IMG/VR virus record: IMGVR_UViG_3300027969_000039
Span: 124,001 to 188,000 of that record
DNA length: 64,000 nucleotides
Direction: 5' to 3' (one strand)
A program made the translations under genes and the position numbers. The stretch's first letter is position 1; the number at the start of each line of letters is the position of its first letter. Below the pieces are notes generated by a model, which was given only the letters and a program-made list of their open reading frames with translations, was not told where the DNA came from and did not search any database. Below, piece after piece: positions 17,617-58,563 of this stretch.

Positions 17617-17645
17617 AGTATAGCACAAAACCCATTTATTGTCAA
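17617..17645 (-). promoter_or_regulatory. Early promoter TTGACA-17-TATACT
   Basis: Variant of the repeated cassette. Confidence 0.8.
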
Positions 17646-19272: not shown

Positions 19273-19329
19273 ATACTTCCTTAAAATTAAAAGTATAACA
19301 GAAAGATTAGCTAGTTGCAACTATATTGG

Positions 19330-22894: not shown

Positions 22895-23116
22895 TCAAAA
22901 TAGTTTTTTGGGAAGACTTTGGTCACGTAAGTATTTTTGCCATCTGCGTTTGGCTAGACCTTTATCTACTTTACGCTGTATACTAGGCTTGACATATTGT
23001 TCCCGATCACGCAATTCCTGCAATAGGTTTTGGTCTGTAATCTTCTTTTTAAACTTCCGTAATGCTTTTTCAACATTTCCATCTGTTACAATAACTCGTC
23101 TTCCTTTAATACTCAT
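22895..23116 (-). CDS. rpsU: Ribosomal protein bS21
   Basis: [11 protein letters not shown]...ELR.RE.YVKPS..RK; LPKKLF C-terminus resembles betaproteobacterial S21. Confidence 0.92.
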
Positions 23117-24321
23117 AAAATTGATTTTGGTTCTAAAACTTGCTCCCTTGTTATATTTATCTCAGTTACGTTATTTTCTCTGTACTTTTTGGTGTTGAAC
23201 ATATGCGGCATGAGTACTTTTTCAATTTCCGTGTGTAATCCACGTGCCCCAGTCTTTAATTTCAAGCAATTTTCAACAATTTGTTCTAGTGCCCCGGCAT
23301 CAAATTCTAATTTGATATTGTCAATACTCAATAGATACTTGTACTGGTCAATATAGTTGTTTTTTACTTCCGTAAGTACACGCAGCAATTCTTGCTTATT
23401 TAATTCCCCGATGCTAACCGTAGTAGTAAAACGGCCGATAAATTCAGGAATCATCCCGTACTTAGTTAAGTCATCCGGAGAAACTTGTCCTAAATCACCT
23501 TCTTTTTTGTGGTCTTTGATCTCTGCACCAAATCCAATACTAGTTCCGTTCATGCGGTTATTGATTATATCTTTCAATCCAACAAAGGCTCCGCCTGATA
23601 TGAATAATATATTTTTCGTATCAATCTCCAGCATTTCTCCACCAGGATGCTTTCTGCCACCTGCTGCTGGAATACGACAAACTGTACCTTCAACCAACTT
23701 AAGCAATGCTTGTTGCACACCTTCACCTGATACATCGCGTGTAATGTTTACGCTTTCTCCTTTACGTGCAATCTTGTCAATTTCATCAACGAACACAATG
23801 CCACGCTCTGCTAGTCTAGGATCACCTCCAGCAGCATTCACCAACATGCTAATCATTGATTCAACATCATCACCAACATATCCTGCCTCAGTTAAACTTG
23901 TAGCATCAGCAACGACAAAGGGCACTTTGAGATATTTGGCTACAGTCTTAGCAAGCAAGGTTTTACCTGAACCAGTTGGTCCAATCAACAATACATTACC
24001 TTTTTGAATGTCTAAATCTTTAGGAGGATGTGTGATGCGCTTATAGTGATTAGCGATAGCCACACTCAGTACCTCCTTGGCACTATCTTGACCAATAACA
24101 TGCTGGTCTAGATAATCTTTAATTGAAGAAGGATCGTTGTATGGTTCTTCTTCTTTGGGTTTAGGAGTTTCTGCTACTAGATTTTCATCTTCAATAAGTT
24201 GGGTACATAGTTCAATACATTCACTACATATAGCAACATCATCTCCAACGATTAGTTTTTTAACTTTATCTTTATGTGTATTACAAAAAGAACAATATGT
24301 CAATTTTGATTCAGTGGTCAT
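23113..24321 (-). CDS. clpX: ATP-dependent Clp protease ATP-binding subunit
   Basis: C4 zinc domain, [12 protein letters not shown] pore loop, DEIDK, RKH loop, IGF loop, GARGL. Confidence 0.97.
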
Positions 24322-32782: not shown

Positions 32783-33037
32783 TTATTTCATTAGTAGGCC
32801 CATCAGAATTAGCTTTTCCAAGTGGTCTATCGCTTTATTAATGTTGTCAACTTGAGTTTGGGTATAATCTGTACTGCGAATTCTACGACCATTTACTTCA
32901 AGTTTGCTTAGTTCGGTCACCATAACTTGAATATTATCATACATCTTTTTCAAGTCTGGATTGTAACCCATGCGGTGTAGATCAGTCTTTAGTCTATCTG
33001 ATACTTCTTGCCAATCTAGTGCTGTTTGGATTTTCAT
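32783..33037 (-). CDS. Hypothetical protein (likely start MKIQTALDW)
   Basis: ATG 6 nt downstream of a perfect -10 box. Confidence 0.65.
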   Translation of the reverse strand: MKIQTALDWQEVSDRLKTDLHRMGYNPDLKKMYDNIQVMVTELSKLEVNGRRIRSTDYTQTQVDNINKAIDHLEKLILMGLLMK

Positions 33038-33043
33038 ATTGTT

Positions 33044-33072
33044 ATTATAATACCTTTTGGTATTTATGTCAA
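33044..33072 (-). promoter_or_regulatory. Promoter TTGACA-17-TATAAT
   Basis: Perfect hexamers; spacer differs from the repeated cassette. Confidence 0.8.
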
Positions 33073-33099
33073 GGATGTTGTACAAACATAAATAAGATT

Positions 33100-33744
33100 G
33101 TGAAACCCACAATCGCATTATTCTTGTACGACCCGAAATGCTCCGTCCAATCAGGAAACGGGATGATGAAGGCTTTAAGTGAGTATTATAACTTCAAAAT
33201 CTTTAGTAAAAATAAGTTAGAATACGATTTCTTTGACGGGGTAGATATGATTGCTGTTCCGGGAGGGATCGGGGATAGTGATACATTCAAACAACTTTTC
33301 AAAAACAACGGAAAACGAGTAAAAGATTTCATCCATGGTGGCGGTAGATACTTAGGTATCTGTATGGGTGCATATTGGGCAGGTAGTCATTACTTGAATG
33401 TACTAGATGATGTTGATGCGGTACAGTATATCAAACAACCTGGTACTGATACACGTAGACCACATGCTAAAAACTTAGCAATAACATGGAAAGACGAACC
33501 CATGAACATGTTCTTCTATGATGGGTGTTCGCTAGTTGGCAATAGACACAAATTCAGAACGGTCGCTACATACGCAAATGGTGATGCGATGGCTATCTAT
33601 CAAAAACGCATAGGACTGATTGGTTGTCATCCTGAAAGTGAACAGTTTTGGTATGATAGCTACAGCTACATGAAGGGCAAGTGGCACGGCGGCGAGCAGC
33701 ACGAATTGTTGTTAGATTTCACTAACGATTTAATGAATAGGTAA
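33100..33744 (+). CDS. Class I glutamine amidotransferase-like (BPL_N-type) protein
   Basis: VPGG, GGRYLGICMGAY nucleophile elbow, HPE; GTG start after ATAAATA. Confidence 0.8.
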   Translation: MKPTIALFLYDPKCSVQSGNGMMKALSEYYNFKIFSKNKLEYDFFDGVDMIAVPGGIGDSDTFKQLFKNNGKRVKDFIHGGGRYLGICMGAYWAGSHYLNVLDDVDAVQYIKQPGTDTRRPHAKNLAITWKDEPMNMFFYDGCSLVGNRHKFRTVATYANGDAMAIYQKRIGLIGCHPESEQFWYDSYSYMKGKWHGGEQHELLLDFTNDLMNR

Positions 33745-36555: not shown

Positions 36556-37551
36556 TTAAAATAATCCTAGTTGTTTCCAATCAGAACGAATCTTAGCTTT
36601 GACTGCTGCCGGTAATGCAACATAGTCTAACTCATCTGCGGCTTTGTCGCCATTATTGAAAGCCCAATCAAAGAATGTTAGAGCAGTTTTAGATGCAGCA
36701 ACATCACCTGGCTTTACATAAACAAGAATGAATGTAGCACCACTGATAGGCCATGCTTCTTTGCCTGCTTGATTAGTCAATATCTGATAGTAACTCTTGT
36801 TCCAGTCAGCGTTAGCAGCGGCTGCTTTGAATGCATCTTCTGTAGGTGCTACCCAATTGCCTGCTGCATTCTGCACATTGACCCAGTTCATCTTGGCTTG
36901 TTTTACATAAGCATATTCAACATAGCCCAATGCCCCCGGAAGTTGGCGAACCATAGCAGAAACGCCTTCGTTACCCTTACCACCTGCTCCTGTTTTCCAA
37001 CTAACAGCAGTGCCTTCACCGATTGTATCTTTGAACTCTTTGCTGACTTTGCTCAAGTAGTTGGTCCAGATGAATGTTGTGCCACTTCCATCTGCACGGC
37101 GAACCACTGTGATAGCTTGATCGGGCAATGCTAGTGACGGGTTCAATGATTTGATAGCAGCATCATCCCAACGGGTGATCTTGCCCAAGAAGATATCAGC
37201 CATGACTGCACCTGTCAAGCGTAGTTGTCCGGGCTCAATTCCTTTGAGGTTGATTACCGGAACAACTCCACCAATTGCTGTAGGAAACTGAAACAAGCCT
37301 GATGCTTGAAGTTTGTCATCGGTGAGTGGCATGTCACTTGCACCGAACGTGACGGTCTTTGCTTCAATCTGCTTGATGCCTGCGCCTGAACCAACTGATT
37401 GATAGTTGATCTTGATGTTGGTAGACTTGTTATATTCACTCGCCCACTTTGCATATAACGGAGCCGGGAATGTTGCCCCGGCTCCTGTAATCTCTTGTGC
37501 TGATGCAGCGAATGCTATCACTGCCAATAATGTTGTAAACAGTTTTTTCAT
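36556..37551 (-). CDS. pstS: Phosphate ABC transporter substrate-binding protein
   Basis: GAGATFPAPLY, YQSVGSGAG, FGASD, RRADGSGTT, GKGNEGV, GYVEY, WPI; signal peptide. Confidence 0.97.
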   Translation of the reverse strand: MKKLFTTLLAVIAFAASAQEITGAGATFPAPLYAKWASEYNKSTNIKINYQSVGSGAGIKQIEAKTVTFGASDMPLTDDKLQASGLFQFPTAIGGVVPVINLKGIEPGQLRLTGAVMADIFLGKITRWDDAAIKSLNPSLALPDQAITVVRRADGSGTTFIWTNYLSKVSKEFKDTIGEGTAVSWKTGAGGKGNEGVSAMVRQLPGALGYVEYAYVKQAKMNWVNVQNAAGNWVAPTEDAFKAAAANADWNKSYYQILTNQAGKEAWPISGATFILVYVKPGDVAASKTALTFFDWAFNNGDKAADELDYVALPAAVKAKIRSDWKQLGLF

Positions 37552-37582
37552 GTAATCTCCTTGTGTGTTACACAAATATTTA

Positions 37583-37658: not shown

Positions 37659-38558
37659 TTAGAAATTGAATTCTACGCCTACACCGTATTGATTAATATC
37701 AGTAGCAGCATCTAGGTAACTCCAACGAGCATTGAATGTCAATGCTTTGTTCATCGCATAGCTTACACCCAAACCACGACCGGTCACGCTAGTGTTAGTC
37801 TGACCATATGTACCTTGAACTGCAAAACGATCACCGATTGCTTGGCTGATACCAACGCTAGAACCTGTGGTGCTTACATTAGATACCTTGTCATCGCTAT
37901 ACATTCCGAACACTGTAGTTCCAGTACTAACCAATTTGTATTTCACACCAACGATAGTGCTGAGACTGGTGCTGCTGTCATCATAACGAGCGACTGTAGC
38001 AGACATAGGTCCCAAAGTGTAGCTGATGCTACCAGTCTGAACATTAGTAGTTCCAGCAGTTTCGCTATTAGCCATCACATATTGTCCTGTGAAGCCAGCG
38101 ATACTTGCTGTGTTCACGAACAAACCATTTTGCAAACGACTGCCTTGTGCAGAGTGAATGGTAGCGGCAATAGTGCCATACGCATTGTCAAATGCGTCAT
38201 AGTTATCCAACACACGAACTACACTGTGCTTGTCACGACCCATGCCTAAAGAACCTAAATTATTGCTCAAGCTAAAGAGTGAAGTACGATCACCTAAAGT
38301 GGTAGCACTTGGTGCGTCCATTGCTACGCCAGTTTCGATGATAACGGCAGCGGTGATTCCATCACCAACATCACTAGAGGCTTTTACACCTAAGCGGCTT
38401 GAGTCATTGGTCAACCGAGTGAGGGCACTAGCGGTACCAGCTGTGTATGATTCTTGATACTCACGTACTTTGCCATAGACGCTGACTTGGGGAGCGGTTT
38501 GTGCTAGCACAAAACCTGAGGCCAATGCTAGGGCCAAGAGTAAAGCATATTTCTTCAT
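37659..38558 (-). CDS. Gram-negative general porin (betaproteobacterial type)
   Basis: Signal peptide, VSVYG, SRLG.K, G.L.MGR, alternating beta strands, C-terminal Phe. Confidence 0.85.
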   Translation of the reverse strand: MKKYALLLALALASGFVLAQTAPQVSVYGKVREYQESYTAGTASALTRLTNDSSRLGVKASSDVGDGITAAVIIETGVAMDAPSATTLGDRTSLFSLSNNLGSLGMGRDKHSVVRVLDNYDAFDNAYGTIAATIHSAQGSRLQNGLFVNTASIAGFTGQYVMANSETAGTTNVQTGSISYTLGPMSATVARYDDSSTSLSTIVGVKYKLVSTGTTVFGMYSDDKVSNVSTTGSSVGISQAIGDRFAVQGTYGQTNTSVTGRGLGVSYAMNKALTFNARWSYLDAATDINQYGVGVEFNF

Positions 38559-38690: not shown

Positions 38691-38716
38691 GAAAAAGACA
38701 CCTAAGTGTCTTTTTT
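38691..38716. terminator. Bidirectional intrinsic terminator after pqqA
   Basis: aaaaagacac-ctaa-gtgtctttttt. Confidence 0.75.
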
Positions 38717-38730
38717 GGTTAATATGTGAA

Positions 38731-38805
38731 TTAACGATTAGCAATATACATGGTAATTTCAAAACCGAAACGCATATCGCTTGCTTGAGGGGTAGTCCAT
38801 TTCAT
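38731..38805 (-). CDS. pqqA: PQQ precursor peptide PqqA (MKWTTPQASDMRFGFEITMYIANR), not in ORF track
   Basis: 24 aa, W-x-x-P leader, GFE-x-x-x-Y core, ANR end; AGGAG RBS; own terminator. Confidence 0.93.
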   Translation of the reverse strand: MKWTTPQASDMRFGFEITMYIANR

Positions 38806-38911
38806 AATTGTTCTCCTATATCAAATTGACATTGTATATATCGTTTATATGTGTTGCCATAACCTAAATAACATAGTGAAAAGTATGAATCTTTATTAGT
38901 GTTACTACTAA

Positions 38912-38934
38912 TAAGAAACCCGCCGAAGCGGGTT
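38912..38934 (-). terminator. Terminator of the tmRNA gene
   Basis: aacccgc-UUCG-gcgggtt followed by U-rich tail. Confidence 0.8.
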
Positions 38935-38939
38935 CTGGT

Positions 38940-39232
38940 TGTTTCTTTTATACAGTAAGTCCTACTGCACCTTAGCTTAAGCAGCTAAAGAATATAACTC
39001 ATCGTTTGCAGTTATGAAATTTGCTTGATTAACGGTCATCGCCTACCGTGTTGCCGTCTCTACTATCTACCTCTGTCGAAACCAGGGCAGGCCCGTCAGA
39101 AGCATACTCCTACAGATCGAAACTGATAAAGATAAGTGCGTACACCTATCCGAGTGAGTATGCTTATGGTGGACCTGGCGGGAGTCGAACCCGCGTCCAG
39201 AAGTCCTTCGCTTTGAAGGGATTACAACAATA
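38940..39232 (-). ncRNA. ssrA: Circularly permuted (two-piece) tmRNA, tag (A)ANDELYSLAA
   Basis: Acceptor piece with T-arm and CAGGUCC-ACCA ends at 39167 and precedes the coding piece starting GGGCCUG at 39094; G3.U70 pair; tag ORF 38977-39009; ends approximate. Confidence 0.92.
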
Positions 39233-39243
39233 ACTTCTATTTA

Positions 39244-39387
39244 TCACCAAGTTTTCTTAGCGATCCAATGTTGGATTTCTTGCACCCGCCATGCTAGTCC
39301 CCAAGGCAGTGTGAAAAATATCTTCTCACCACTAGGAGTATACATGGTCCGACCATCACTGTCAACCCCCATCAATCCTATAAACAT
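39244..39387 (-). CDS. 47-aa hypothetical protein (likely start MFIGLMG)
   Basis: GAGGAG RBS. Confidence 0.55.
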   Translation of the reverse strand: MFIGLMGVDSDGRTMYTPSGEKIFFTLPWGLAWRVQEIQHWIAKKTW

Positions 39388-39722: not shown

Positions 39723-41930
39723 TTATACACTTTTAAATTCTAGTTTGTCAAATTTAATGGGTGTATAATGTTTTGGAGATGTAGTATGTGAATTAGGAAC
39801 AGCTACGTTATATCTTTCAGGATTTGCCCATGAACCAGTATCTTGCCATTTATGTTTAAATGAGAAATCAATTGTACTATTTAAATGTCTTTCTTCTGCA
39901 ATTAACTCCATGAATTCTTCGTGATTTCTGCCACCGTCTCCCCACTTTGGTTTAGCTAGTTTTCTAGCACGAATGGATGCATTAGATTGTTGTCTAGAAT
40001 AATCTTGTGCAAAAAACGGAGATTTTGCCGATAAAGGATCTACTGGATCGATAATAGTGACCGGTTGTTGATAGTAATAATCAAAATCTGCTTCCCAATT
40101 ACCTTCATCATCTATTGTAAAATTATGATTAGCCCAATAAGGGCCGGCATTTCTTTCACCAAATTCTATCATATCTAAATCTTGATCAAATTTAATTGTA
40201 GCAGTAAATCCTCCTCGTGTACGCCATAGTATTCTAAACAATGTAAATATTTCATTTACTAAACTATCAGCAAAGGGATTGATGTCAGGATGTATTATAT
40301 TGTAATCAAAGTTTTCATATTCAATTTCTTTTTGCATTGTAGGATCATCAAACACAATTTTATAATGATGCATTGGCAAATTACCACGCTGCGGGATTGA
40401 AACTGATTTTTCAGTTAACAAATGCTGCAAGAATACTGCAAATACTTTCATCCTAACCATGACATGAAATTTAGAAAGTTTGAAATCTTTAGTTATCCAT
40501 CCACCTGCATACTTGTGTGCTAGTAAATTAAACTTATCAGGATTTTGTCCAACAATAGTATCCATACCTAAACCAAATCCAAATCCAGCAGCAATATTAG
40601 CTATGTTGTTATTTCTATTACGCCATAAAAAAGTCATTGTATCTGCAAAATTTTGATATGATTCTGTTGGGAACCCTACTATCCAATTGGTAAAAGCATT
40701 TACTCCAGTTTTCTTCCCATCTATAAAGTTTTGTTCCATTTCAGCAATAGTAACACCTTTGTCAATATCATCTAGTACAGGCTGACTTCCAGACTCTATG
40801 CCATAGTTTAACATATGACAACCTGAATCAGCTAAATCTTGATAGAATGCTAAATCCATTCGTCCATCACATCTTGCATATCCAGTCCAATGAATTTTCA
40901 TACCTTTAGCAATGACTCCTTTGCAGAAGGCTCTAAGTTCATTTAGATTTCCATTTACCAAACTATCAATAAACCAAACTATGTCAGTTCCTTTTTCATA
41001 GTATAATGTTTCTATTTCTTTTAGAATATCAGTAGCCATGCGTTGACGATATTTCCAAAAATGTGTTTCTTCACAAAAGGTGCATTTTGCAGTACAACCT
41101 CTACTCAGTTCACTATTAACTCCATTTGGAAATTCATATTCATTGAAATCAAAATTAGAATAATCAGGCATAGGCAAGTCATTCAAATTTAATCTTTGTT
41201 CTTCAGGTTGTGCTAGCTTTTGAACCTTGTCGTGAATTATTCCGTTTTCAATTTCTTCTAAAATTTCTAAAAGAAGTAATTCACCTTCCCCATTGATAAC
41301 ATAATCAAACATATTATCATCTTCTCCACTCCAAGCATGTGGTTCTTGGCAAGGTCTAATATTAGGACCACCTACTAGTATTTTAATATTTGGCAATCTT
41401 TCTCTTAATTTTTTCACCATATACTTAACTGGTTCTGCATTTGTATAGTACATAGTAAATCCTATAACGTCAGGAGGATTTTTAACAATCTGTTCTATGT
41501 ATTTGTTTAATAAAATGCTCAGATGCGGATGTATATCACTATGGTAGTCTTTTGCTAACCATTTCCAATCTCTTGCGCCGTCCCACGGGTCGAAATCAAT
41601 AAGTCCATCATTTCGCCATTTGTGAGATAAGTTATATGCCTTTACATTCAAATCAATACAATTAGATTCATATCCAGCGCCTTTTGCAACCGCAGACAGT
41701 CTTGCAAGATTGAACGGTGGAAACATTGGTGCCCATTCTGGACAAAGTATTAATAATAACTTTGTTTTTCTATACGCATAGTTGATATCAATAGTAGTTA
41801 CATTTTTTTGAACTTTAGTTTTTGCATAAGGTGCAATAGCTTGCAACATAGCCAGATGCTTAATATCAGCGTCAGGCTCTAGTGGTCTTGATTCCACTAT
41901 CTTTTTTTTATATTGATATAATTCACTCAT
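39723..41930 (-). CDS. Cobalamin-binding radical SAM enzyme
   Basis: PPFNLARL, VGGP, GEGE, SRGCTAKCTFC, GIESGS, IVGFPTE. Confidence 0.9.
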   Translation of the reverse strand: MSELYQYKKKIVESRPLEPDADIKHLAMLQAIAPYAKTKVQKNVTTIDINYAYRKTKLLLILCPEWAPMFPPFNLARLSAVAKGAGYESNCIDLNVKAYNLSHKWRNDGLIDFDPWDGARDWKWLAKDYHSDIHPHLSILLNKYIEQIVKNPPDVIGFTMYYTNAEPVKYMVKKLRERLPNIKILVGGPNIRPCQEPHAWSGEDDNMFDYVINGEGELLLLEILEEIENGIIHDKVQKLAQPEEQRLNLNDLPMPDYSNFDFNEYEFPNGVNSELSRGCTAKCTFCEETHFWKYRQRMATDILKEIETLYYEKGTDIVWFIDSLVNGNLNELRAFCKGVIAKGMKIHWTGYARCDGRMDLAFYQDLADSGCHMLNYGIESGSQPVLDDIDKGVTIAEMEQNFIDGKKTGVNAFTNWIVGFPTESYQNFADTMTFLWRNRNNNIANIAAGFGFGLGMDTIVGQNPDKFNLLAHKYAGGWITKDFKLSKFHVMVRMKVFAVFLQHLLTEKSVSIPQRGNLPMHHYKIVFDDPTMQKEIEYENFDYNIIHPDINPFADSLVNEIFTLFRILWRTRGGFTATIKFDQDLDMIEFGERNAGPYWANHNFTIDDEGNWEADFDYYYQQPVTIIDPVDPLSAKSPFFAQDYSRQQSNASIRARKLAKPKWGDGGRNHEEFMELIAEERHLNSTIDFSFKHKWQDTGSWANPERYNVAVPNSHTTSPKHYTPIKFDKLEFKSV

Positions 41931-48316: not shown

Positions 48317-50239
48317 ATGAAGAAAAAGAAAATTAGTTTCGTACAACCCAATTTTCAGCAAGGACCCAAAGAGTTTAATGCTTATTATTTGCCATATTCA
48401 GCCGGGGTGATTTTAAGTTACGCATTGAATGATGAAAAAATCAAAGAATCTTGGAAATTACATCACTTAGTATGGCGCAGGGAACCTATTGATGAATTAG
48501 CATTAAAACTCAGCACCAGTGACCTAGTAGCATTCTCGACTTATGTCTGGAACCATCGTTACAATTATAAATTAGCACATATGATAAAGGTGCTTAATTC
48601 AAAGTGTTTAATTGTTTTTGGTGGACCAGAACCTGCTATTGAAGATACTAAACTGTTTGAGAAAGAACCGTTTATGGATTTAGTAATCAAGATGGAAGGA
48701 GAAGTGACATTCAAGCGTATATTAGAAGATTTTGATTCGGACTATACGCACATACCTGGATTGTTAATTAACTCTCCTAATGGAATGATTAATACCGGAG
48801 ATCCTAACCGCATAAATGAGTTAGATGAGATTCCTAGTCCATACTTGACAGGTATATTTGATAAAATAATTTCAGAAAATCCTAACATAATATGGAACGC
48901 TACACTAGAAACAAATCGCGGTTGTCCCTATGCATGTACATTTTGTGACTGGGGAAGTCTTACCTATAACAAAGTAAAGAAGTTTGATATGCAAAGGGTA
49001 TATGATGAATTAGATTGGATTGGAGAACATTGTGGATTCGTCACTATCACCGATGCTAACTTTGGAATGTTTGTAGAGCGTGACAATGCTATTGTAGATA
49101 AATTAATTGAAGTGCAAAAGAAGTGGGACAATTTAAAAAGTTTCTCAATGACATGGGCAAAAAATCAAAAGAATGAAGTAGTTGATATTGTCAAAAAACT
49201 AATAACTGAATCTCCTAATTTTGGGCAAGGACTTACCGTTAGCGTACAGAGCATGGATCAAGATGTACTAGAAAACATAAAACGCAGGAATCTTGACCAA
49301 CACAAGATTGACGAAATCTTTGCACTATGTGATAAGAATAATATACCAGTATATACAGAATTGATATTAGGTTTACCCGGTGAGACAGTAGAATCATGGA
49401 AAAATGCTTTCTGGAAAATATTCCGTGCGGGCAATCATAATGGAATTAACATTCTACAATGTCAATTACTAGAAAATGCTGAGATGAATTTATTGCAGAA
49501 AAAACTATACAAGTTAGAATCAGTTGCTGTATATGATTATATGAGTGGTAGTTACGGTGACAAAGATTTAAATGAAAGCATTGATGTAGTAGTATCAACA
49601 AAAACTATACCGCATGAATTAATGTTAGATACTCTAGTATGGTCTAGTTTTATACAAACATTTCATATCAATGGGTTGACAACGTACATAGCTAGATACT
49701 TAGCTAAACAAGATATAGACTATTCTGTGTTCTATGAAAATTTATATGAATGGATTAAAAAAGATTCATGGTTTAGATTACAATTCGCAGATACACGCAG
49801 TTATTTTGCTAACTGGATGACCAATGGTAGAATCGATCACCCTAAGATTGGTAACATTGAAGTATTTGGGTGGAACCTTATGCACAGAACTACTCTGTAC
49901 ATGGTCAAAGACAAAATGATTAATTATGTATTTGAATCATTAGATGAATTTTTGCGAGAAACTTATAATATTGAATCTCCTGTTAGAGAACAACTATTAC
50001 AATTCCAAAGAAACTATGTTATTGATTACAGAGACCTAGGTGCTCTGCCACGATATCAAAGTTTTGATTATGATTTTTTAGGATATATTCAAGACAACAG
50101 TAATATAAAAAATAGTGCAATTTATAAATTTGACACTACTGAAGATAAAGATATGAGCCAAGACCGTTTCTTAGAAAATATGTATTTTGGTAGAAAAAGA
50201 AACTTTGGAAAAACTATTATTTCTCGTGCATCAGTTTAG
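48317..50239 (+). CDS. Cobalamin-binding radical SAM enzyme
   Basis: LPYSAG, STYVWN, GGPE, EGE, ETNRGCPYACTFCDW, DANFG, ELILGLPGET. Confidence 0.9.
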   Translation: MKKKKISFVQPNFQQGPKEFNAYYLPYSAGVILSYALNDEKIKESWKLHHLVWRREPIDELALKLSTSDLVAFSTYVWNHRYNYKLAHMIKVLNSKCLIVFGGPEPAIEDTKLFEKEPFMDLVIKMEGEVTFKRILEDFDSDYTHIPGLLINSPNGMINTGDPNRINELDEIPSPYLTGIFDKIISENPNIIWNATLETNRGCPYACTFCDWGSLTYNKVKKFDMQRVYDELDWIGEHCGFVTITDANFGMFVERDNAIVDKLIEVQKKWDNLKSFSMTWAKNQKNEVVDIVKKLITESPNFGQGLTVSVQSMDQDVLENIKRRNLDQHKIDEIFALCDKNNIPVYTELILGLPGETVESWKNAFWKIFRAGNHNGINILQCQLLENAEMNLLQKKLYKLESVAVYDYMSGSYGDKDLNESIDVVVSTKTIPHELMLDTLVWSSFIQTFHINGLTTYIARYLAKQDIDYSVFYENLYEWIKKDSWFRLQFADTRSYFANWMTNGRIDHPKIGNIEVFGWNLMHRTTLYMVKDKMINYVFESLDEFLRETYNIESPVREQLLQFQRNYVIDYRDLGALPRYQSFDYDFLGYIQDNSNIKNSAIYKFDTTEDKDMSQDRFLENMYFGRKRNFGKTIISRASV

Positions 50240-51425: not shown

Positions 51426-52670
51426 TTATATCCAATAATCTTTCATATACGGTATATAATCAAATATATTTCTATTACGATGCTTATCTAATGACGTAAC
51501 AAATTTTTGCATTTCTAACCACTTATTGATTCGCAACTCGCTATCAACTTGTTTGTTTATTACAGTATTAAGTATGTTATTAATTGCCGAAGTGTACTTA
51601 TCTCCTAAATTGCGTTCAGCAGATAATTGAATTACTCGTTGTAGAGTATCTTTAGCTTTCTCTTTCATCTCATTTGGCATGTATATAGGATCAAAATAGT
51701 CAGGGTTATTAACACATTGTATGTGCGGGAGACTTTTTAATATGCTTGAATTAGTTTCAATCTGAGTTTCCCACCAATCAATTAAAGTATCCAATGTGAG
51801 CAGGTTCAATGAGATTACAGTATGACTTAATCCAATATGGTAATTGCCATGCTGTTTAGCAATTTCTTTTAAATTATCTAACTGTGATGTTACCTTATTC
51901 CAACTGAAGGGGTATCTAATATATTCATTAATAGGACCTACTCCATCTACACTAATAGTAATATGCTTAGTACTAAAGTGACTCCACAACTCTAACAATT
52001 CATCTGAGACTCCAGTCAAATTAGTTACATATCCTAATGTTATATTTTTTGCTCTACCTTGGTCAATCAATCGTTTTAATAAAAATATATGTGGTTCATT
52101 GATTGTAGGTTCGCCGCCTAAAAACTGTATAGCACTAAGGTTAGGTAAGTTATCAATCAAGTTAGGTATATTTTCTTCAGTAAACCAGTTTGGAGTAATC
52201 CAATCCATTTTTTCACCAGTGATAATCTCTTGTTCTTTTTTCCAAAGTGAACTAGCAGATTCATTACACATTAAACATGCACTATTACATTTATTACCCA
52301 CTGTTATATCTAATAAAAATATATTAGATAAGTCAGGTATAGTAGCAGTAGCAGTATGAAGATTTTTATTTAATCTAGATTCCACACTATCTAACGTATT
52401 ATTGAATATTTGTCTGGTACTAGCTTGTCCATGCTGTTCTCTAGTACGACACATGTTACATATAGGATCCCATTTACCATCTAGTAGTTTTGTTCTTAGC
52501 GATACTAACTCATCATTGTTAAACCATTTTACTACATTATTATCATAGTTCTTTAGTTGATGCCGTGTTTGCCCGGGCCAAAAATAAGTATCTACTGCAC
52601 AACAAGGTCTTATGGTTCCGTCGTATCCAAAACTTATAGAATTTGATGCTAGCGCACAATACAGTGACAT
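51426..52670 (-). CDS. Radical SAM protein, N-terminal twitch/SPASM-like
   Basis: PCC...CxxC; GNKCNSACLMC; LGGEP. Confidence 0.88.
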   Translation of the reverse strand: MSLYCALASNSISFGYDGTIRPCCAVDTYFWPGQTRHQLKNYDNNVVKWFNNDELVSLRTKLLDGKWDPICNMCRTREQHGQASTRQIFNNTLDSVESRLNKNLHTATATIPDLSNIFLLDITVGNKCNSACLMCNESASSLWKKEQEIITGEKMDWITPNWFTEENIPNLIDNLPNLSAIQFLGGEPTINEPHIFLLKRLIDQGRAKNITLGYVTNLTGVSDELLELWSHFSTKHITISVDGVGPINEYIRYPFSWNKVTSQLDNLKEIAKQHGNYHIGLSHTVISLNLLTLDTLIDWWETQIETNSSILKSLPHIQCVNNPDYFDPIYMPNEMKEKAKDTLQRVIQLSAERNLGDKYTSAINNILNTVINKQVDSELRINKWLEMQKFVTSLDKHRNRNIFDYIPYMKDYWI

Positions 52671-53642
52671 TTAAATTTCCTTTGTAATAAGTATATCGGT
52701 TCCGCATGTACATTGCTGCTTTTTACATATCACTGGTTCTGCTACTGTAGTAACAGTATCATATATATTACCCAATGAAGGGCCTTGCCCACAACTTGCA
52801 GCAGTTATATGTCCAGTACTATTTATAAACAAACTTTCATCAACATAGCATTTCCATCCTGAAAAGAAATTTTTACGTTCTGCCACCAGTCTATTACCGT
52901 TCAACGGTTGCTCTGTTTCAGACTCATATACTTCTTTGCTTGCAGTTCGCCATTTACTTCCATTTGGCTTACTAATTTTAGTTTGTGATTCAAATGTATG
53001 TGTCTCAAAGAATTCATACATTCTAGGTTCACTGTATTTCCATGGACCCACATTGACACTAATGTCATCAAACAATGGCACCCATTCTAAATTATAATTT
53101 TGTAAAATAGATTTTACTCTTTCCCCAAACTCAACAACTTCATCAAATCTATTTTCTTGCATCATCATTCTACAGCATAGATAATTTACCTTATCTTGTA
53201 AAAAAATCAAGTTGTCTAAGTACCTAGGAGTATTTGCAAAATCAATATGATAGCTAGCTACAACGTCATGGAACAAGTGATAATTCTCTTTCCACCAGTT
53301 AGTGCTAGTACTCAAATTAGTATTGATTGCAATTTGCGGGTCATCTAGTCGTTCTTTTAACCATTTAATCAATGGTAATAAATGAGGCCAAACAGTAGGC
53401 TCTCCCCCACTAAAGAAGAATTTAAATCCTTTATATCCCCTAGCTTCTTGTGCAGTTAAAATTATGTTTAAATTGTCTACTATCTTATCAAAATCTTTTG
53501 GCTCATTCTTCTTAGGATTTTTGCCTGCCCAGTTACCAGGATTGCAATAACTACATTTAAAATTACAGAAGTCACTTACTTGCCAGGTTATATTGATATA
53601 CGGAGTTTCTACCGGTCTTATCGCTATCAATTTATCATTCAT
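52671..53642 (-). CDS. Radical SAM protein with C-terminal Cys cluster
   Basis: CNFKCSYC; SGGEPT; WKC...SC...C...CTC. Confidence 0.88.
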   Translation of the reverse strand: MNDKLIAIRPVETPYINITWQVSDFCNFKCSYCNPGNWAGKNPKKNEPKDFDKIVDNLNIILTAQEARGYKGFKFFFSGGEPTVWPHLLPLIKWLKERLDDPQIAINTNLSTSTNWWKENYHLFHDVVASYHIDFANTPRYLDNLIFLQDKVNYLCCRMMMQENRFDEVVEFGERVKSILQNYNLEWVPLFDDISVNVGPWKYSEPRMYEFFETHTFESQTKISKPNGSKWRTASKEVYESETEQPLNGNRLVAERKNFFSGWKCYVDESLFINSTGHITAASCGQGPSLGNIYDTVTTVAEPVICKKQQCTCGTDILITKEI

Positions 53643-55000
53643 ATGATATCCTTAAACAATTCAGTACCTTTCAAATTACGATGCTTGTCATTAAACTCAA
53701 TAAAATGTTTTAATCTGTCACTCAACTCGCTATTGTATGGAGAATTTAATACTGAATCTTTATACGCATTAAAAGTATGGTCATCAACTACAAATCTATT
53801 TGGGGCGTCATTGTAATATTTTCTATAATTCATTGATTGTTTGGTAACTATTTCAATATATTCTTCTCTAATGTTTTTAGGAATAGCGTTCAATGAAAGA
53901 AATTCAGGTGCAGATAAAGTTATAGGCCACCACGTTATGTGTTTATCATGTTTAGAAGATAGCAAATACAACATACTCCAAATTGACATAACATGCTTAA
54001 AATTCATAGCTTGTAGTACAGTATAGCATTTTATCTTCCAACCTGGTCGAGTTGATGCTAACTCAACTGCTTTATCTACGTTTTCTCTAACTTTGGCAAA
54101 GTCACTAGGATACCTAATATATTCACCTACTTCACCAACCCCGTCAATACTCATCTGTATTTCAACGTTTTTAAATTTTTCTAACTTACTATAGAATGAT
54201 TGATTCCAAGTTGTCATATTACTAGTAAATTCTATTTGGCAGTCTGTGTTATTTGCTTCCAATAACATTTCAAACATTTTGTAATTAGCTTTAATTAAGG
54301 TAGGTTCACCGCCGGTAGTATATAATCTACGCAAAGTAGGAGCCATCTTTTTAAAATTGTTGTAAAATATTTCAGTTTCAAACCAATCACGAACATCAGT
54401 CTCATTAACTATTTGTTGTTCTGTTTTCCACTTTGACTTTAACCAACTTAATTTTGGATTATCTAAATAATTTTTATCTAAATATTCTGTTCTTTCTTGA
54501 TGTATCAAAGAACTACTCATGCCCCAACAACTAACACATTGTAAGTTACATTGATTGCCTAATCTAAGTTCCAGGCTAACAGGTAATTGTGGTACTGATT
54601 GTTTTTCTAAATTTGCATCTAAATAATTAGATAACAATTTATCTTTTTGTATATATGACAACCACATTGCATTTTGACCCATTCTAGGACTATGTCCTGA
54701 TAGTTTTTCTATTTTGTAGCAATCTTGACAATCAGGAGCACCTTCTCCTTTTATTTTTCTTTCTCTAACATATTGCATATAAATGCTGTCCCATATTTCA
54801 TCAATGTCATGGTATCCTAAATTGTAAGATTTAGCATTTTTATCTGAGACAAAGGTATCTAAAGGAATACTACAGCATAGTTTTATATTACCGTTTGGGT
54901 TAGTGTTTAAATTTAACCATGGCAAAGTACAAAATTTATCTACACTTTTAATAGCCCAATCAAGTTTTTTAGTAACTGGTGCAGTTTCTAATTCATTCAT
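53639..55000 (-). CDS. Radical SAM protein, N-terminal twitch/SPASM-like
   Basis: FCTLPW...LCC...CQDC; GNQCNLQCVSC; TGGEP. Confidence 0.88.
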   Translation of the reverse strand: MNELETAPVTKKLDWAIKSVDKFCTLPWLNLNTNPNGNIKLCCSIPLDTFVSDKNAKSYNLGYHDIDEIWDSIYMQYVRERKIKGEGAPDCQDCYKIEKLSGHSPRMGQNAMWLSYIQKDKLLSNYLDANLEKQSVPQLPVSLELRLGNQCNLQCVSCWGMSSSLIHQERTEYLDKNYLDNPKLSWLKSKWKTEQQIVNETDVRDWFETEIFYNNFKKMAPTLRRLYTTGGEPTLIKANYKMFEMLLEANNTDCQIEFTSNMTTWNQSFYSKLEKFKNVEIQMSIDGVGEVGEYIRYPSDFAKVRENVDKAVELASTRPGWKIKCYTVLQAMNFKHVMSIWSMLYLLSSKHDKHITWWPITLSAPEFLSLNAIPKNIREEYIEIVTKQSMNYRKYYNDAPNRFVVDDHTFNAYKDSVLNSPYNSELSDRLKHFIEFNDKHRNLKGTELFKDII

Positions 55001-55034
55001 AATATTTTTAATTCATTCATAATATTTTTAATTC
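54990..55034. repeat. Exact 20-bp tandem duplication at a gene junction
   Basis: attcattcataatattttta twice plus a partial copy. Confidence 0.9.
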
Positions 55035-56219
55035 CGGATAAATTTCTATAAATTTTTCATTTCTAACTTCATCAATGACTGTTATTTGTTTTTTAAATTC
55101 AGATAACAGATTAGTATGATCTACACTATCCATATAACTTACTATTCCTTTTACATCATGTATGATGTTGTCTTTTGCATTATTCTTAACTAACCAATCA
55201 CAATATTCTTCATACAGTTGTCTAATTTTTTCTTTCTCATCTTCTGGTAAAATAGTAATTGAAAAGTATCTTGGATGTGTCAAAATATTTATTCGTATGT
55301 TATTGATGTCCAATAATCCTTCTTCTACCCATGATTTATGAAACTCAAACAAACTATGCACACTAAAGATACCTACAGTAGGGGTGATTTCGAAATAAAC
55401 ATCTGGACAAAGCATTATCATTTGTTGTCTGTTTAGTACTATGTCATCCCAGTTAGTTCCTTTCCTAGCATATTCAGCTATCTTGCCGTGCGTATCTAAA
55501 CTAGCAGCGACACGAACATCTTTGAACTTTTTCCAATAATCAAGTATAGACTTGTCCTTGTAACGGAAATTACTAAAGTTAGTTGTATATCTTAACTTGA
55601 TATGTGTAAGACCTTTTGACAACCAGTAATCTAGTATCTCATAATGTTGGGGAGTTATCAATGCTTCGCCTCCGGCAAAATACACTTCTTCTATCGTATC
55701 TAAATGCGGCATTAAATCATTCATAAAGTTAGGATTAGATTTTAAATCAATGAATTTCTTTGTTACTGATTCTGGGTGCAATTTTACTTGATCATCATAC
55801 CAACTGCTACTCAAGCTAGGACCGCATGTCCTGCATTTCATGTTGCATAAATTACTGAATCTAATATCTAAGTATCTCATTTTAAAGTCATCAATGCTAC
55901 CATCTTCTTTAGTTTCAGTTAAGTAAGGTAAATGATTTTTAAAACTTTGTAAACTGTTTTTACGCAACGTCCAACTGTCTGCGGTATCTTCTAACTCATA
56001 ACACCGTGAACATGCTGTAGGTTTTTCTCCATTAAGCATTTGTTTTCGTATGGTTTTATAGTTGGTATTGTTCATCAAATCATTAAGAGATTCTTTATGA
56101 ACATTCCCAAATACTTCTTTAGTATCACTCATGCAACATGGAAACGCATCGCCGTTAGGCCATATGTGTGTATGTATCCATGGCATCAAACAAATAACAT
56201 TTTGATCAATATTTTTCAT
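55017..56219 (-). CDS. Radical SAM protein, N-terminal twitch/SPASM-like
   Basis: CLMPW...PCC...CSRC; SNLCNMKCRTC; AGGE. Confidence 0.9.
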   Translation of the reverse strand: MKNIDQNVICLMPWIHTHIWPNGDAFPCCMSDTKEVFGNVHKESLNDLMNNTNYKTIRKQMLNGEKPTACSRCYELEDTADSWTLRKNSLQSFKNHLPYLTETKEDGSIDDFKMRYLDIRFSNLCNMKCRTCGPSLSSSWYDDQVKLHPESVTKKFIDLKSNPNFMNDLMPHLDTIEEVYFAGGEALITPQHYEILDYWLSKGLTHIKLRYTTNFSNFRYKDKSILDYWKKFKDVRVAASLDTHGKIAEYARKGTNWDDIVLNRQQMIMLCPDVYFEITPTVGIFSVHSLFEFHKSWVEEGLLDINNIRINILTHPRYFSITILPEDEKEKIRQLYEEYCDWLVKNNAKDNIIHDVKGIVSYMDSVDHTNLLSEFKKQITVIDEVRNEKFIEIYPELKIL

Positions 56220-57610: not shown

Positions 57611-58563
57611 CACCATCCTTCAATCTTGCGAATAACATCCATTTCAGTTACTAATGGCCCCAGATTACGAAAATCTGCTTTATAATGTCTCTTAAAGAAT
57701 TTGCTTTGTCCTCTATCTAGTGTACACATTGGCAATCCAAGTTTGTCATGTAATCCTGCACCTAATAGTGTTGCTTCACGCTCTGGATCTCTATTATATT
57801 CTTGTTCTTCCCACATTGTTATATAGTTGTCAAACCATTGAACACTGGTGTGGTCCCAATCAGTTAACATGGTCATGTATGTTCCAAGTCTTGCCCCGTA
57901 AATAGCCCACATCCCATTCTCAACATCAGCACCTACATTGTGCCATATGGTTAAGTTGTTTAGATTGCGACTAGCAACTGTTTCTTTGAAAGTATTAATA
58001 TCAGGCTTTGCTCCTTTGTCTAAACACATCTTGACTCCTTCACGGAATCCAGCACGCCATGCTTGAAATGGTGTATAGTTAGGGTAAGTAGTAGAGTAAC
58101 AATCATACATTGCCCAGTATAGGTTATCTTTGCTGTCTAAACAAAAGTCAGCAATACGTGATACATCACCGTCAGTTTGATGCTCATGTGTTTTCATTTC
58201 ACGCACATAAGTTTTTGTCCAGCTACTCATACCGCCATTGCCGTAACGTAATCCATTTATACTATTAACTGCTTTCCAACGGAACTGTGCTTTCTGAAAC
58301 TTTTCATCTTTGCTAGTGAAGTCTAATTGAATGTTGAAGAAACTTTCTTCTGGCATGTTGTCACCATCAATCAATATGAATCGTTCAGTATCACTAGCCT
58401 CACCTGCTGCTTTGTGTGCGGCATCACTACCTTTGACTCCGTCAACTCTTTTAGCCCATGGGACCATATTCTTAATCTTAAGCCAAAATTCTTCTTTCTG
58501 TGGTTCATCATAGCTTAAGTAGATACAATCTAAATCAGCTACATCAACAATATCATAACTCAT
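57610..58563 (-). CDS. Putative GT-A glycosyltransferase-like protein
   Basis: LSYDEP, RVDGVKG...AH.AA, IDGD (DxD), NGL.YGNGG, AWRAGFREGVK. Confidence 0.65.
   Translation of the reverse strand: MSYDIVDVADLDCIYLSYDEPQKEEFWLKIKNMVPWAKRVDGVKGSDAAHKAAGEASDTERFILIDGDNMPEESFFNIQLDFTSKDEKFQKAQFRWKAVNSINGLRYGNGGMSSWTKTYVREMKTHEHQTDGDVSRIADFCLDSKDNLYWAMYDCYSTTYPNYTPFQAWRAGFREGVKMCLDKGAKPDINTFKETVASRNLNNLTIWHNVGADVENGMWAIYGARLGTYMTMLTDWDHTSVQWFDNYITMWEEQEYNRDPEREATLLGAGLHDKLGLPMCTLDRGQSKFFKRHYKADFRNLGPLVTEMDVIRKIEGW

What the first reader, a model, noticed from the sequence alone, without database searches (positions are those of the whole stretch)
38691..38817. Stand-alone pqqA (PQQ cofactor precursor peptide) in a phage genome
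Seen: a 24-aa ORF missed by the ORF track, MKWTTPQASDMRFGFEITMYIANR, with AGGAG RBS and its own terminator, between the tmRNA and the porin. Known: PqqA carries the E-x-x-x-Y pair cross-linked by PqqE/PqqD, and each peptide yields one PQQ, so it is a consumed substrate. No pqqB/C/D/E is recognisable in the window. Inference: the phage supplies extra substrate to the host pathway to raise PQQ dehydrogenase activity (energy, or acid-mediated phosphate solubilisation, fitting the adjacent P module), or it acts as a decoy. A RiPP precursor as an auxiliary metabolic gene would be missed by ordinary gene callers.
Basis: partly seen in the sequence, partly recalled or inferred. Interest (0 to 1): 0.87.

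Follow-up and report, generated by a model that had tools for sequence, protein, structure and literature searches.

The report
Phage-borne stand-alone PQQ precursor gene

Summary
Window 38731..38805 (-) is a 24-aa ORF with an AGGAG ribosome-binding site and a hairpin plus U-run terminator. It scores about twice the curated cut-offs of both PqqA models. It lies 106 nt downstream of a two-piece betaproteobacterial tmRNA and upstream of a porin-like gene and pstS.

The window is part of a 231-kb IMG/VR contig with phage genes and no PqqB/C/D/E.

The idea is not new: Coutinho et al. 2020 reported a viral PqqA in Lake Baikal methylotroph viruses. New here:
- PqqA ORFs occur, unannotated, in nine cultured Methylophilales phage records spanning myo-, sipho- and podoviruses.
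None has pqqB-E nearby, and collection-wide scans found PqqC or PqqE on only 3 short contigs.
- The viral copies are under purifying selection, with W, P, E and Y invariant.
- In 34 loci, as here, pqqA follows a phage tmRNA on the same strand.

Best explanation (confidence about 0.6): a consumable-substrate auxiliary gene that feeds the host PqqD/E/B/C pathway. The phosphate-solubilisation link is unsupported. No expression or biochemical data exist.

The parts
38731..38805 (-). pqqA coding sequence: 24 codons plus stop. Glu16 and Tyr20 are the cross-link pair; Trp3 and Pro6 are the conserved leader residues.
   Evidence: ORF list. PF08042 40.4 bits against 21.1. TIGR02107 38.1 bits against 20. 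Column conservation across 126 viral copies.
38813..38817 (-). Shine-Dalgarno AGGAG, 7 nt upstream of the ATG.
   Evidence: Sequence. An SD-like motif lies 3-18 nt upstream in 227 of 227 viral copies examined.
38692..38717 (-). Intrinsic-terminator-like hairpin (10 bp, 4-nt loop) running into a U-tract, 14 nt after the stop codon.
   Evidence: RNA fold of the 71-nt stretch: -14.3 kcal/mol, z = -4.34, 0 of 200 shuffles fold as well.
38831..38860 (-). Weak sigma-70-like promoter candidate (ATGGCA-18-TACAAT, 9 of 12) between the tmRNA and pqqA. Read-through from the tmRNA gene is the alternative source of transcription.
   Evidence: Consensus scan only. In related loci a promoter-like site most often ends 41-50 nt before the ATG; 84 of 227 loci have one. 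Not evidence of function.
38912..39282 (-). Phage-encoded two-piece (permuted) betaproteobacterial-type tmRNA, tag ANDELYSLAA, ending in its own terminator hairpin at 38916-38935. It lies upstream of pqqA on the same strand.
   Evidence: Rfam RF01850 155.6 bits against 84, and RF04321 148.4 bits. ARAGORN 38886-39259. A tmRNA lies upstream on the same strand in 34 other viral pqqA loci.
37659..38558 (-). Downstream neighbour: a 299-aa secreted protein ending in Phe, weakly porin-like. Not a conserved partner of pqqA.
   Evidence: PDB PorB hit, E = 0.0038. No Pfam or NCBIfam hit. Found only on the two contigs identical to the window.
36556..37575 (-). pstS, the phosphate ABC transporter binding protein and a classical phage auxiliary gene. 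A neighbour, not functionally tied to pqqA by any evidence.
   Evidence: NF008171 427 bits against 339, TIGR00975 390 bits against 205. A homologue lies near pqqA in 5 other viral loci.

Best explanation
The ORF is a functional phage copy of pqqA, the ribosomal peptide that is destroyed stoichiometrically to make one molecule of pyrroloquinoline quinone (PQQ).

Proposed mechanism:
1. During infection the phage transcribes pqqA, either from a weak promoter of its own or by read-through from the strongly expressed tmRNA gene just upstream. The strong AGGAG site drives translation.
2. The host's own enzymes process the 24-aa peptide. PqqD binds the leader (W3, P6). The radical-SAM enzyme PqqE cross-links Glu16 to Tyr20. 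A host peptidase trims the peptide. PqqB and PqqC finish the cofactor.
3. The PQQ loads periplasmic quinoprotein dehydrogenases (XoxF/MxaF methanol dehydrogenase, or alcohol or glucose dehydrogenases). This sustains or raises respiratory energy supply while host transcription is failing.

The logic resembles cyanophage psbA: the phage supplies the one component of the pathway that is consumed and needs continuous synthesis, and relies on the host for the reusable enzymes.

Shown: identity, stand-alone status, phage residence, purifying selection, recurrence across unrelated phages.

Inferred: expression, processing by host enzymes, benefit to the phage, and host identity (probably a freshwater betaproteobacterium of the Comamonadaceae type).
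For: Identity:
- Both curated PqqA models are passed about two-fold.

Phage residence:
- The window is 100% identical to parts of the 230,993-nt contig IMGVR_UViG_3300027733_001253.
- It carries phage-family genes: ligase phrog_114, dCMP deaminase, Hsp20, phrog_11543 and phrog_11259.
- Its proteins hit Pelagibacter phage Mosig, jumbo phages and Limnohabitans phage DC31.
- The pqqA GC of 0.37 matches the phage rather than the bacterial homologues.

Recurrence:
- tblastn finds PqqA ORFs in Melnitz (4 records), P19250A, MEP301, MEP401, MEP402, Venkman and a Manatee Spring podovirus.
- The six of these that I put through the HMM all pass PF08042 at 37-43 bits.

Precursor only:
- 0 of 239 viral loci have PqqB-E in their flanks, against 96 of 120 bacterial loci tested the same way.
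- The complete genomes of Venkman and MEP402 have no PqqB-E and no radical-SAM gene.
- IMG/VR-wide motif scans found PqqC on 1 contig and PqqE on 2 short contigs, none of them the window's contig.

Selection for a processable peptide:
- W at -9, P at -6 and a stop 4 codons after Tyr occur in 126 of 127 copies.
- Outside the search pattern, pS is 0.53 and pN is 0.17.
- Identical peptides are encoded by up to 19 different DNAs.
- E-x3-Y is present in 120 of 120 copies found with a pattern that did not specify E or Y.
- An SD motif is present in 227 of 227 copies.

Plausibility:
- A methylotroph has five pqqA copies, three of them orphan. One orphan is among the most expressed and tracks PQQ synthesis (PMC9851590).
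- Overexpressing pqqA alone raised PQQ in G. oxydans (cited in PMC7936290).
- xoxF is the most transcribed gene of OM43 (PMC5120137).
- The closest bacterial PqqA sequences (22 of 24 residues) belong to freshwater Comamonadaceae MAGs. Nine of those ten lie next to pqqB-E; the tenth sits at the edge of its locus.
Against: - There are no transcript, peptide or PQQ measurements for any phage copy.
- PQQ is a recycled cofactor, so the gain from more precursor during a short infection is unproven.
- Raising pqqA alone gives only modest PQQ increases in engineered bacteria.
- The host of this phage is inferred only from a 24-aa peptide, the tmRNA type and one distant protein hit.
- The PqqC and PqqE scans need exact conserved motifs and could miss divergent viral versions.
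- Only 64 kb of the 231-kb genome was read directly.
Confidence: 0.62

Rival explanations
1. Decoy or inhibitor. The phage peptide occupies host PqqD/PqqE, or is processed unproductively, in order to lower PQQ synthesis and redirect host metabolism or SAM.
For: The leader residues needed for recognition are conserved. No phage enzyme accompanies the peptide. Nothing measured distinguishes supply from blockade.
Against: - A decoy needs only the leader, yet Glu and Tyr, their spacing and the 4-residue tail are kept in 120 of 120 and 126 of 127 copies.
- The phage peptides are near-identical to host-type substrates (22 of 24 residues).
- Lowering the cofactor of the host's main energy enzyme would hurt a lytic phage.
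Confidence: 0.07
2. Substrate for the phage's own radical-SAM enzymes. The window carries at least five N-terminal-twitch radical-SAM paralogues and two B12-binding radical-SAM proteins. One of them might cross-link or methylate PqqA into PQQ or into a different product, independently of host PqqE.
For: At least 8 radical-SAM ORFs lie within 64 kb, and the nearest starts 900 nt upstream of pqqA. Some have weak similarity to RiPP maturases. Distant homologues of the B12 radical-SAM protein lie near pqqA in 5 other loci. The Baikal paper also linked viral radical-SAM genes to PQQ.
Against: - None matches PqqE (TIGR02109 is absent from all hit lists; tblastn is negative).
- No PqqD-like match was found.
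- The cluster also holds a UDP-glucose dehydrogenase-like gene, which suggests sugar chemistry.
- pqqA occurs in complete 38-44 kb phages with no radical-SAM gene at all.
- Identity among the radical-SAM neighbours is only 24-30%.
Confidence: 0.06
3. Not a working phage gene. It could be a remnant of an integration site (attP overlapping host pqqA), freshly captured host DNA, or an assembly chimera.
For: Small genes and tRNA or tmRNA genes are common integration targets, and pqqA often lies beside a tRNA or tmRNA. Some carriers encode recombinases.
Against: - The whole ORF with start codon, SD and stop is kept in 227 of 227 and 126 of 127 copies.
- Synonymous sites are diverged (pS 0.53) while the peptide is kept, which is the opposite of an att core.
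- The carriers include the T4-like myovirus Melnitz, whose authors found no integrase. The complete Venkman and MEP402 records annotate no integrase.
- The GC content is ameliorated to the phage's.
- The same sequence is present on two IMG/VR loci, L293 and L344.
Confidence: 0.03
4. The peptide has a function unrelated to PQQ, for example regulatory, anti-defence or signalling, and only retains the PqqA sequence by descent.
For: No functional data exist. One metagenome study saw PqqA-family peptides co-expressed with defence systems (PMC11118758).
Against: The pattern of conservation is exactly that required for PQQ biogenesis. The host-range association with methylotrophs and PQQ-operon-bearing Burkholderiales fits cofactor supply.
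Confidence: 0.1

Closest known systems
Bacterial PqqA (PF08042 / TIGR02107), in particular the orphan extra pqqA copies of methylotrophs (pqqA3-5 of a Methylovorus/Hyphomicrobium-type producer, PMC9851590)
   Same: - Same length.
- Same W-x-x-P leader and the same E-x3-Y cross-link pair.
- Same short tail.
- 22 of 24 residues identical to Comamonadaceae PqqA.
- Orphan copies away from pqqBCDE also exist in bacteria: 24 of 120 loci, and the literature.
   Different: - Encoded on a 231-kb phage genome.
- GC content adapted to the phage.
- No pqq enzyme anywhere on the element, as far as tested.
- Placed behind a phage tmRNA.
Viral PqqA of Lake Baikal virus population VP_266 (Coutinho et al. 2020, Microbiome, PMC7678222)
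   Same: A freshwater virus predicted to infect a methylotroph that carries the PQQ precursor peptide. It was proposed as an auxiliary metabolic gene that boosts methanol oxidation.
   Different: - That report is a single annotated case, alongside a viral methanol dehydrogenase.
- No methanol dehydrogenase-sized quinoprotein was seen in this window.
- The peptide variant here (…ITMYIANR) is the general Burkholderiales type rather than the Methylophilaceae-phage type (…VTMYVMNK).
Unannotated pqqA ORFs of cultured Methylophilales phages (Melnitz, Venkman, MEP301, MEP401/402, P19250A)
   Same: Stand-alone, SD-preceded PqqA ORFs of 23-24 codons that pass PF08042. In Melnitz the ORF lies 11 nt from a tRNA-Leu, much as the window's copy lies behind a tmRNA.
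   Different: - 64-71% peptide identity.
- Different host clade (marine OM43, freshwater LD28).
- Different phage families.
- In the inspected GenBank records the ORF is either uncalled or overlain by a 'hypothetical protein' on the wrong strand.
- The three isolate papers I checked (Melnitz, MEP301 and the OM43-phage lineage paper) do not mention a PQQ gene.
Cyanophage psbA (D1) and similar auxiliary metabolic genes that replace a fast-turnover host component
   Same: Works by the same logic: the phage encodes only the consumed or rapidly lost part of a host energy-producing system and uses the host's remaining machinery. This is an analogy from general knowledge.
   Different: psbA encodes a protein subunit, not a sacrificial peptide substrate of a cofactor pathway. 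There is no sequence relationship.

Membership tests
PqqA (PQQ precursor peptide; PF08042, TIGR02107) | Score above the curated cut-off of the family models. | tested here: met
   PF08042 40.4 bits against 21.1. TIGR02107, an equivalog model, 38.1 bits against 20.
PqqA (PQQ precursor peptide; PF08042, TIGR02107) | Conserved Glu-x-x-x-Tyr pair that is cross-linked to form the PQQ skeleton, in a peptide of about 20-40 residues. | tested here: met
   E16-I-T-M-Y20 in a 24-aa peptide. E and Y are kept in 120 of 120 viral copies found without specifying them.
PqqA (PQQ precursor peptide; PF08042, TIGR02107) | Conserved N-terminal leader (W-T-x-P…) used for recognition by PqqD/PqqE. | tested here: met
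   W3, T4 and P6 are present. W and P are invariant in 126 viral copies, outside the search pattern. Binding itself was not tested.
PqqA (PQQ precursor peptide; PF08042, TIGR02107) | Genomic linkage to pqqBCDE. This is typical of the family, but not obligatory, since orphan copies exist. | tested here: not met
   No PqqB-E in the window or on the window's contig by IMG/VR motif scans. Bacterial control: 96 of 120 loci are linked and 24 of 120 are not. Orphan bacterial copies are documented.
PqqA (PQQ precursor peptide; PF08042, TIGR02107) | Conversion to PQQ by PqqE/D/B/C. | not testable with these tools
   Needs complementation of a pqqA-null strain or an in-vitro PqqE/PqqD assay.
Phage auxiliary metabolic gene | Located inside a bona fide viral genome, flanked by viral genes, and not at a host junction. 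| tested here: met
   231-kb IMG/VR contig. Phage-family genes lie on both sides. The nearest hits are to phages only. GC runs 0.30-0.42 throughout, with no jump to host-like values. No capsid or terminase gene was identified within the 64-kb window itself.
Phage auxiliary metabolic gene | Maintained by selection in phages: recurrent, intact and under purifying selection. | tested here: met
   239 IMG/VR loci and 10 GenBank phage records. pN/pS is 0.32 outside the search pattern, and many synonymous variants encode identical peptides.
Phage auxiliary metabolic gene | The host possesses the rest of the pathway and the gene is expressed during infection. | not testable with these tools
   The host is only inferred. 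The closest bacterial PqqA sequences sit next to pqqB-E. There are no expression data.
PqqE (radical-SAM/SPASM peptide cross-linking enzyme), considered for the window's radical-SAM ORFs | Match to the PqqE family model or to a bona fide PqqE sequence. | tested here: not met
   PqqE is absent from the NCBIfam hit lists of all seven radical-SAM ORFs scanned. Four are NF033640 N-terminal-twitch radical-SAM proteins at 269-396 bits. tblastn with PqqE is negative at E <= 0.01.

The most novel reading that the evidence does not exclude
Precursor-only pqqA may be a general, lineage-crossing phage strategy in two host groups: Methylophilaceae methylotrophs and freshwater Burkholderiales. It may often be wired behind the phage's own tmRNA or tRNA genes so that it is expressed at RNA-gene levels. 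If so, it would be the first widespread auxiliary gene that encodes a sacrificial RiPP substrate rather than an enzyme, and it would measurably control PQQ-dependent carbon oxidation in infected cells. A bolder variant, not excluded, is that in the jumbo phages the peptide is instead processed by the phage's own expanded set of twitch radical-SAM enzymes.
Probability: 0.35. Interest if true: 0.75.

Novelty: new member of a known kind. Interest (0 to 1): 0.5.

Why it matters
PQQ-dependent dehydrogenases, above all XoxF methanol dehydrogenase, carry much of the methanol and alcohol oxidation in lakes and coastal seas. xoxF is the most transcribed gene of OM43.

If phages top up the one consumable input of PQQ synthesis, infected cells would be a distinct metabolic state for C1 cycling.

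The case also shows a blind spot. A 24-codon gene was missed or mis-called in the cultured methylophage records inspected and, by extension, probably in most viromes. Surveys of auxiliary metabolic genes therefore under-count peptide-encoded functions.

Cultured phage-host pairs that carry the gene already exist (Venkman or Melnitz with OM43 strain H5P1; P19250A with LD28), so the hypothesis can be tested directly.

Tried and rejected
- **megablast against phages:** the 6-kb neighbourhood gave no match, so there is no close cultured relative.
- **The search for related loci with the peptide:** I replaced it with degenerate DNA patterns.
- **'Acinetobacter phage MD-2021a' hits:** rejected as phage evidence. 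The record is a bacterial pqqABCDE region with fur and ppk. I used it as a positive control and as the source of the PqqB-E queries.
- **Chimera or host contamination:** rejected on GC, nucleotide divergence and two identical IMG/VR loci.
- **attP remnant:** rejected on synonymous divergence and on occurrence in phages without a found or annotated integrase.
- **PqqE or PqqD among the window's radical-SAM genes:** not found.
- **A conserved protein-coding partner of pqqA:** none found. PstS, the GT4 glycosyltransferase, the metallophosphoesterase and the B12 radical-SAM protein each recur near pqqA in 10 loci or fewer, and the porin-like gene in none.
- **Conserved promoter upstream of pqqA:** only 84 of 227 loci have a sigma-70-like site, so this is inconclusive.
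- **Host assignment from the genome scan:** limited.
- **True total in IMG/VR:** could not be counted, because every scan stopped at 120 rows.

Full report
**1. The observation**

The minus strand of the window carries a 24-codon ORF at 38731..38805 that encodes MKWTTPQASDMRFGFEITMYIANR.
- An AGGAG lies 7 nt before the ATG, at 38813-38817.
- Fourteen nt after the stop codon a 10-bp hairpin runs into a U-tract. The 71-nt stretch folds at -14.3 kcal/mol, z = -4.3, and none of 200 shuffles folds as well.
- The peptide scores 40.4 bits against Pfam PqqA (cut-off 21.1) and 38.1 bits against the NCBIfam equivalog TIGR02107 (cut-off 20).
- It contains the defining Glu16-x3-Tyr20 pair.

**2. Surroundings**

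Upstream on the same strand, 106 nt away, is a full-length two-piece betaproteobacterial tmRNA. Rfam RF01850 gives 155.6 bits against a gathering score of 84, ARAGORN gives the tag ANDELYSLAA, and the gene has its own terminator hairpin.

Downstream lie:
- a 299-aa secreted protein that is only weakly porin-like (PorB, E = 0.004);
- a firm pstS (427 bits);
- a metallophosphoesterase and a GT4 glycosyltransferase.

No PqqB, C, D or E is detectable in the window. tblastn with a bona fide Acinetobacter operon is negative at E <= 0.01.

The window holds at least eight radical-SAM ORFs, and none is PqqE-like. Four are NF033640 N-terminal-twitch radical-SAM paralogues (269-396 bits) and a fifth falls just below that model's cut-off. 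Two are B12-binding enzymes, and one has no specific family.

**3. Phage or bacterium?**

- The window is 100% identical to parts of IMG/VR contig IMGVR_UViG_3300027733_001253, which is 230,993 nt long, and to a second IMG/VR locus.
- It encodes phage-family proteins: ligase phrog_114, dCMP deaminase, Hsp20, phrog_11543 and phrog_11259.
- Its proteins find only phages: Pelagibacter phage Mosig, Xanthomonas, Stenotrophomonas and Ralstonia jumbo phages, and Limnohabitans phage DC31.
- GC is 0.30-0.42 throughout, with no host-like jump.
- The pqqA ORF has GC 0.37. The closest bacterial copies have 0.44-0.47 in loci of 0.47-0.64 GC and share only 57-65 of 75 nt.

So the gene is a resident of the phage, not a chimeric junction. 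I did not identify a capsid or terminase gene within these 64 kb.

**4. Relatives**

*Cultured phages.* tblastn of the peptide against 50,697 phage records hit ten phage records: Methylophilales phages Melnitz (4 records, T4-like myovirus, 141 kb), Venkman, MEP301, MEP401 and MEP402 (Zobellviridae), Methylophilaceae phage P19250A, and a Manatee Spring podovirus.
- The six that I extracted and put through the HMM are each a 23-24-codon ORF with an SD site and pass PF08042 at 37-43 bits.
- In the GenBank records I inspected the ORF is either not called or is overlain by a 'hypothetical protein' on the opposite strand.
- The Melnitz paper mentions PQQ only as a medium supplement. The MEP301 paper and the later OM43-phage lineage paper do not contain the term.
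- Two further hits labelled 'Acinetobacter phage MD-2021a' are a bacterial pqqABCDE region. I used them as a control.

Together they gave 239 distinct loci, from contigs of 4 kb to 365 kb.

**5. Is it really precursor-only?**

- None of the 239 viral loci, which hold up to 14 kb each, contains a PqqB-E homologue.
- The same test finds them beside pqqA in 96 of 120 bacterial loci, at 33-76% identity.
- The complete genomes of Venkman and MEP402 have no PqqB-E and no radical-SAM gene.
- Motif-seeded scans of all IMG/VR with alignments of PqqC and PqqE found one PqqC contig (a giant-virus MAG fragment) and two 5-kb PqqE contigs. None is the window's contig.

Phages thus collect the substrate gene and essentially never the enzymes. 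One caveat applies: those two scans require exact conserved motifs.

**6. Is it a working gene?**

Across 127 copies, 126 have Trp at -9, Pro at -6 and a stop exactly four codons after Tyr.
- In the codons outside the search pattern, pS is 0.53 and pN is 0.17.
- Identical peptides are encoded by up to 19 different DNA sequences.
- A second scan whose pattern specified only the leader and R-F-G-F returned 120 loci. All 120 continue with E-x-x-x-Y.
- All 227 copies with enough flank have an SD-like motif, and 170 of them have AGGAG or AAGGAG.

This is protein-level purifying selection on exactly the features PQQ biogenesis needs. It argues against an att-site remnant and makes a pure decoy less likely.

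**7. Conserved context**

No protein-coding neighbour is consistently linked. PstS recurs in 5 other loci, the B12 radical-SAM protein in 5 loci at 24-30% identity, and the porin-like gene in none.

The recurrent neighbour is an RNA gene. A tmRNA lies within 1 kb in 38 loci, in 34 of them upstream on the same strand as in the window. A tRNA is the nearest RNA gene within 1 kb in 29 more. In Melnitz a tRNA-Leu begins 11 nt downstream of the ORF. Co-transcription with highly expressed RNA genes is a reasonable but untested idea.

**8. Host**

The window's peptide core (RFGFEITMYIANR) is widespread in Burkholderiales genomes.
- The closest full peptides (22 of 24 residues) belong to freshwater Comamonadaceae MAGs (Rhodoferax, Albidiferax, 'Comamonas lk'). 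Nine of those ten lie next to pqqB-E; the tenth sits at the edge of its locus.
- The tmRNA is of the betaproteobacterial two-piece type.
- The only cultured-phage hit of the 2116-aa protein is a Limnohabitans phage.

A freshwater betaproteobacterial host, probably of the Comamonadaceae type, is the best guess. It is inferred, not shown.

The other large group of viral copies (…VTMYVMNK) matches the cultured OM43 and LD28 phages.

**9. Mechanism**

The best-supported reading is a consumable-substrate auxiliary gene. The phage makes PqqA, the host PqqD/E/B/C and a peptidase turn it into PQQ, and the PQQ loads periplasmic quinoprotein dehydrogenases and sustains energy supply.

Support from the literature:
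- Methylotrophs keep several orphan pqqA copies, and one is highly expressed and tracks PQQ synthesis (PMC9851590).
- pqqA overexpression alone raised PQQ in G. oxydans (cited in PMC7936290).
- xoxF is the top transcript of OM43 (PMC5120137).

The steps from transcription to benefit are all inferred. The rivals (decoy, substrate of the phage's own radical-SAM enzymes, non-PQQ function, non-functional remnant) are listed with their tests.

The P genes are not conserved partners of pqqA.

**10. Novelty**

A viral PqqA was already reported and interpreted in this way for Lake Baikal virus population VP_266 (Coutinho et al. 2020, PMC7678222). In the searched library it is the only paper that combines PQQ, precursor peptide and auxiliary metabolic gene. 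So the finding is a new member of a known kind.

As far as I could find, the following are new:
- the scale (hundreds of viral contigs, including jumbo phages of 231-365 kb);
- its presence in all nine matching records of cultured Methylophilales phages, where it is unannotated in those inspected;
- the strict precursor-only pattern;
- the quantitative evidence for selection;
- the tmRNA-pqqA arrangement.

I could not list the phage collection by name, so I cannot state that no Methylophilales phage lacks the gene.

**11. Verdict**

Interest is moderate (0.5): the hypothesis is directly testable in existing culture systems and exposes a systematic annotation gap.

Noticed in passing
window 51426-57616 (-), plus 17642-18685 (-), 39723-41930 (-), 48317-50239 (+): An unusual concentration of radical-SAM genes. 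Four tandem or near-tandem NF033640 'N-terminal twitch domain' radical-SAM paralogues score 269-396 bits against a cut-off of 170, and a fifth at 17.6 kb falls just below the cut-off. There is one more radical-SAM ORF and two B12-binding radical-SAM proteins, one of them KedN5-like at 242 bits. They sit in a low-GC (0.30-0.36) minus-strand cluster with a UDP-glucose dehydrogenase-like gene and several ORFs with no family match. The product is unknown; sugar or peptide chemistry is possible.
   Followed up: partly
window 18685-19320 (-), 23113-24321 (-), 38912-39282 (-): The phage encodes ClpP (PF00574, 263 bits), a ClpX-like ATPase with the ClpX zinc finger, and a tmRNA whose tag ends in …LAA, the ending that ClpXP recognises (from general knowledge). 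That amounts to a complete tag-and-degrade system on one phage genome.
   Followed up: no
239 IMG/VR loci; e.g. L078 2811-3285, L072 4042-5044, L317, L292: A tmRNA lies within 1 kb of pqqA in 38 viral loci, in 34 of them upstream on the same strand. A tRNA is the nearest RNA gene within 1 kb in 29 more, often tRNA-Leu. In Melnitz a tRNA-Leu begins 11 nt downstream of pqqA. This suggests pqqA sits in the RNA-gene region of these phages and may be co-transcribed with it.
   Followed up: partly
L001 5967-6062 (Melnitz MZ577097.1 76100-76195); L006 2067-2195 (MW202481.1): In these GenBank records a 'hypothetical protein' is annotated on the strand opposite the PqqA ORF and overlapping it. This is probably a mis-call. 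In P19250A, MEP301, MEP402 and Venkman nothing is annotated at the site.
   Followed up: yes
L007 (CAKLQF020000010.1 102204-114275): A record labelled 'Acinetobacter phage MD-2021a' carries a chromosomal-looking region (entB, fur, ppk, pqqABCDE and a dipeptidase). The 144-kb contig looks bacterial rather than phage.
   Followed up: partly
L369 (IMGVR_UViG_GVMAG-S-1026894-104_000001), L370, L371: These are the only PqqC and PqqE homologues that the motif scans found in IMG/VR. They lie on a 10.7-kb giant-virus MAG fragment and on two 5-kb contigs, and may be cellular contamination. I did not examine them.
   Followed up: no
Genome-contig loci L134, L195, L207: MAGs labelled 'uncultured Bifidobacterium sp.' carry a Burkholderiales-type pqqA. 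These are probably mis-binned contigs.
   Followed up: no
window 12921-13379 (-), 13801-14643 (-), 33019-33744 (+): Other apparent auxiliary genes: a cysteine dioxygenase-like protein (phrog_4786), a second metallophosphoesterase (phrog_1649), and a protein resembling the biotin-protein-ligase N-terminal domain or a glutamine amidotransferase. The last one is 68% identical to a gene in the related locus L107.
   Followed up: no
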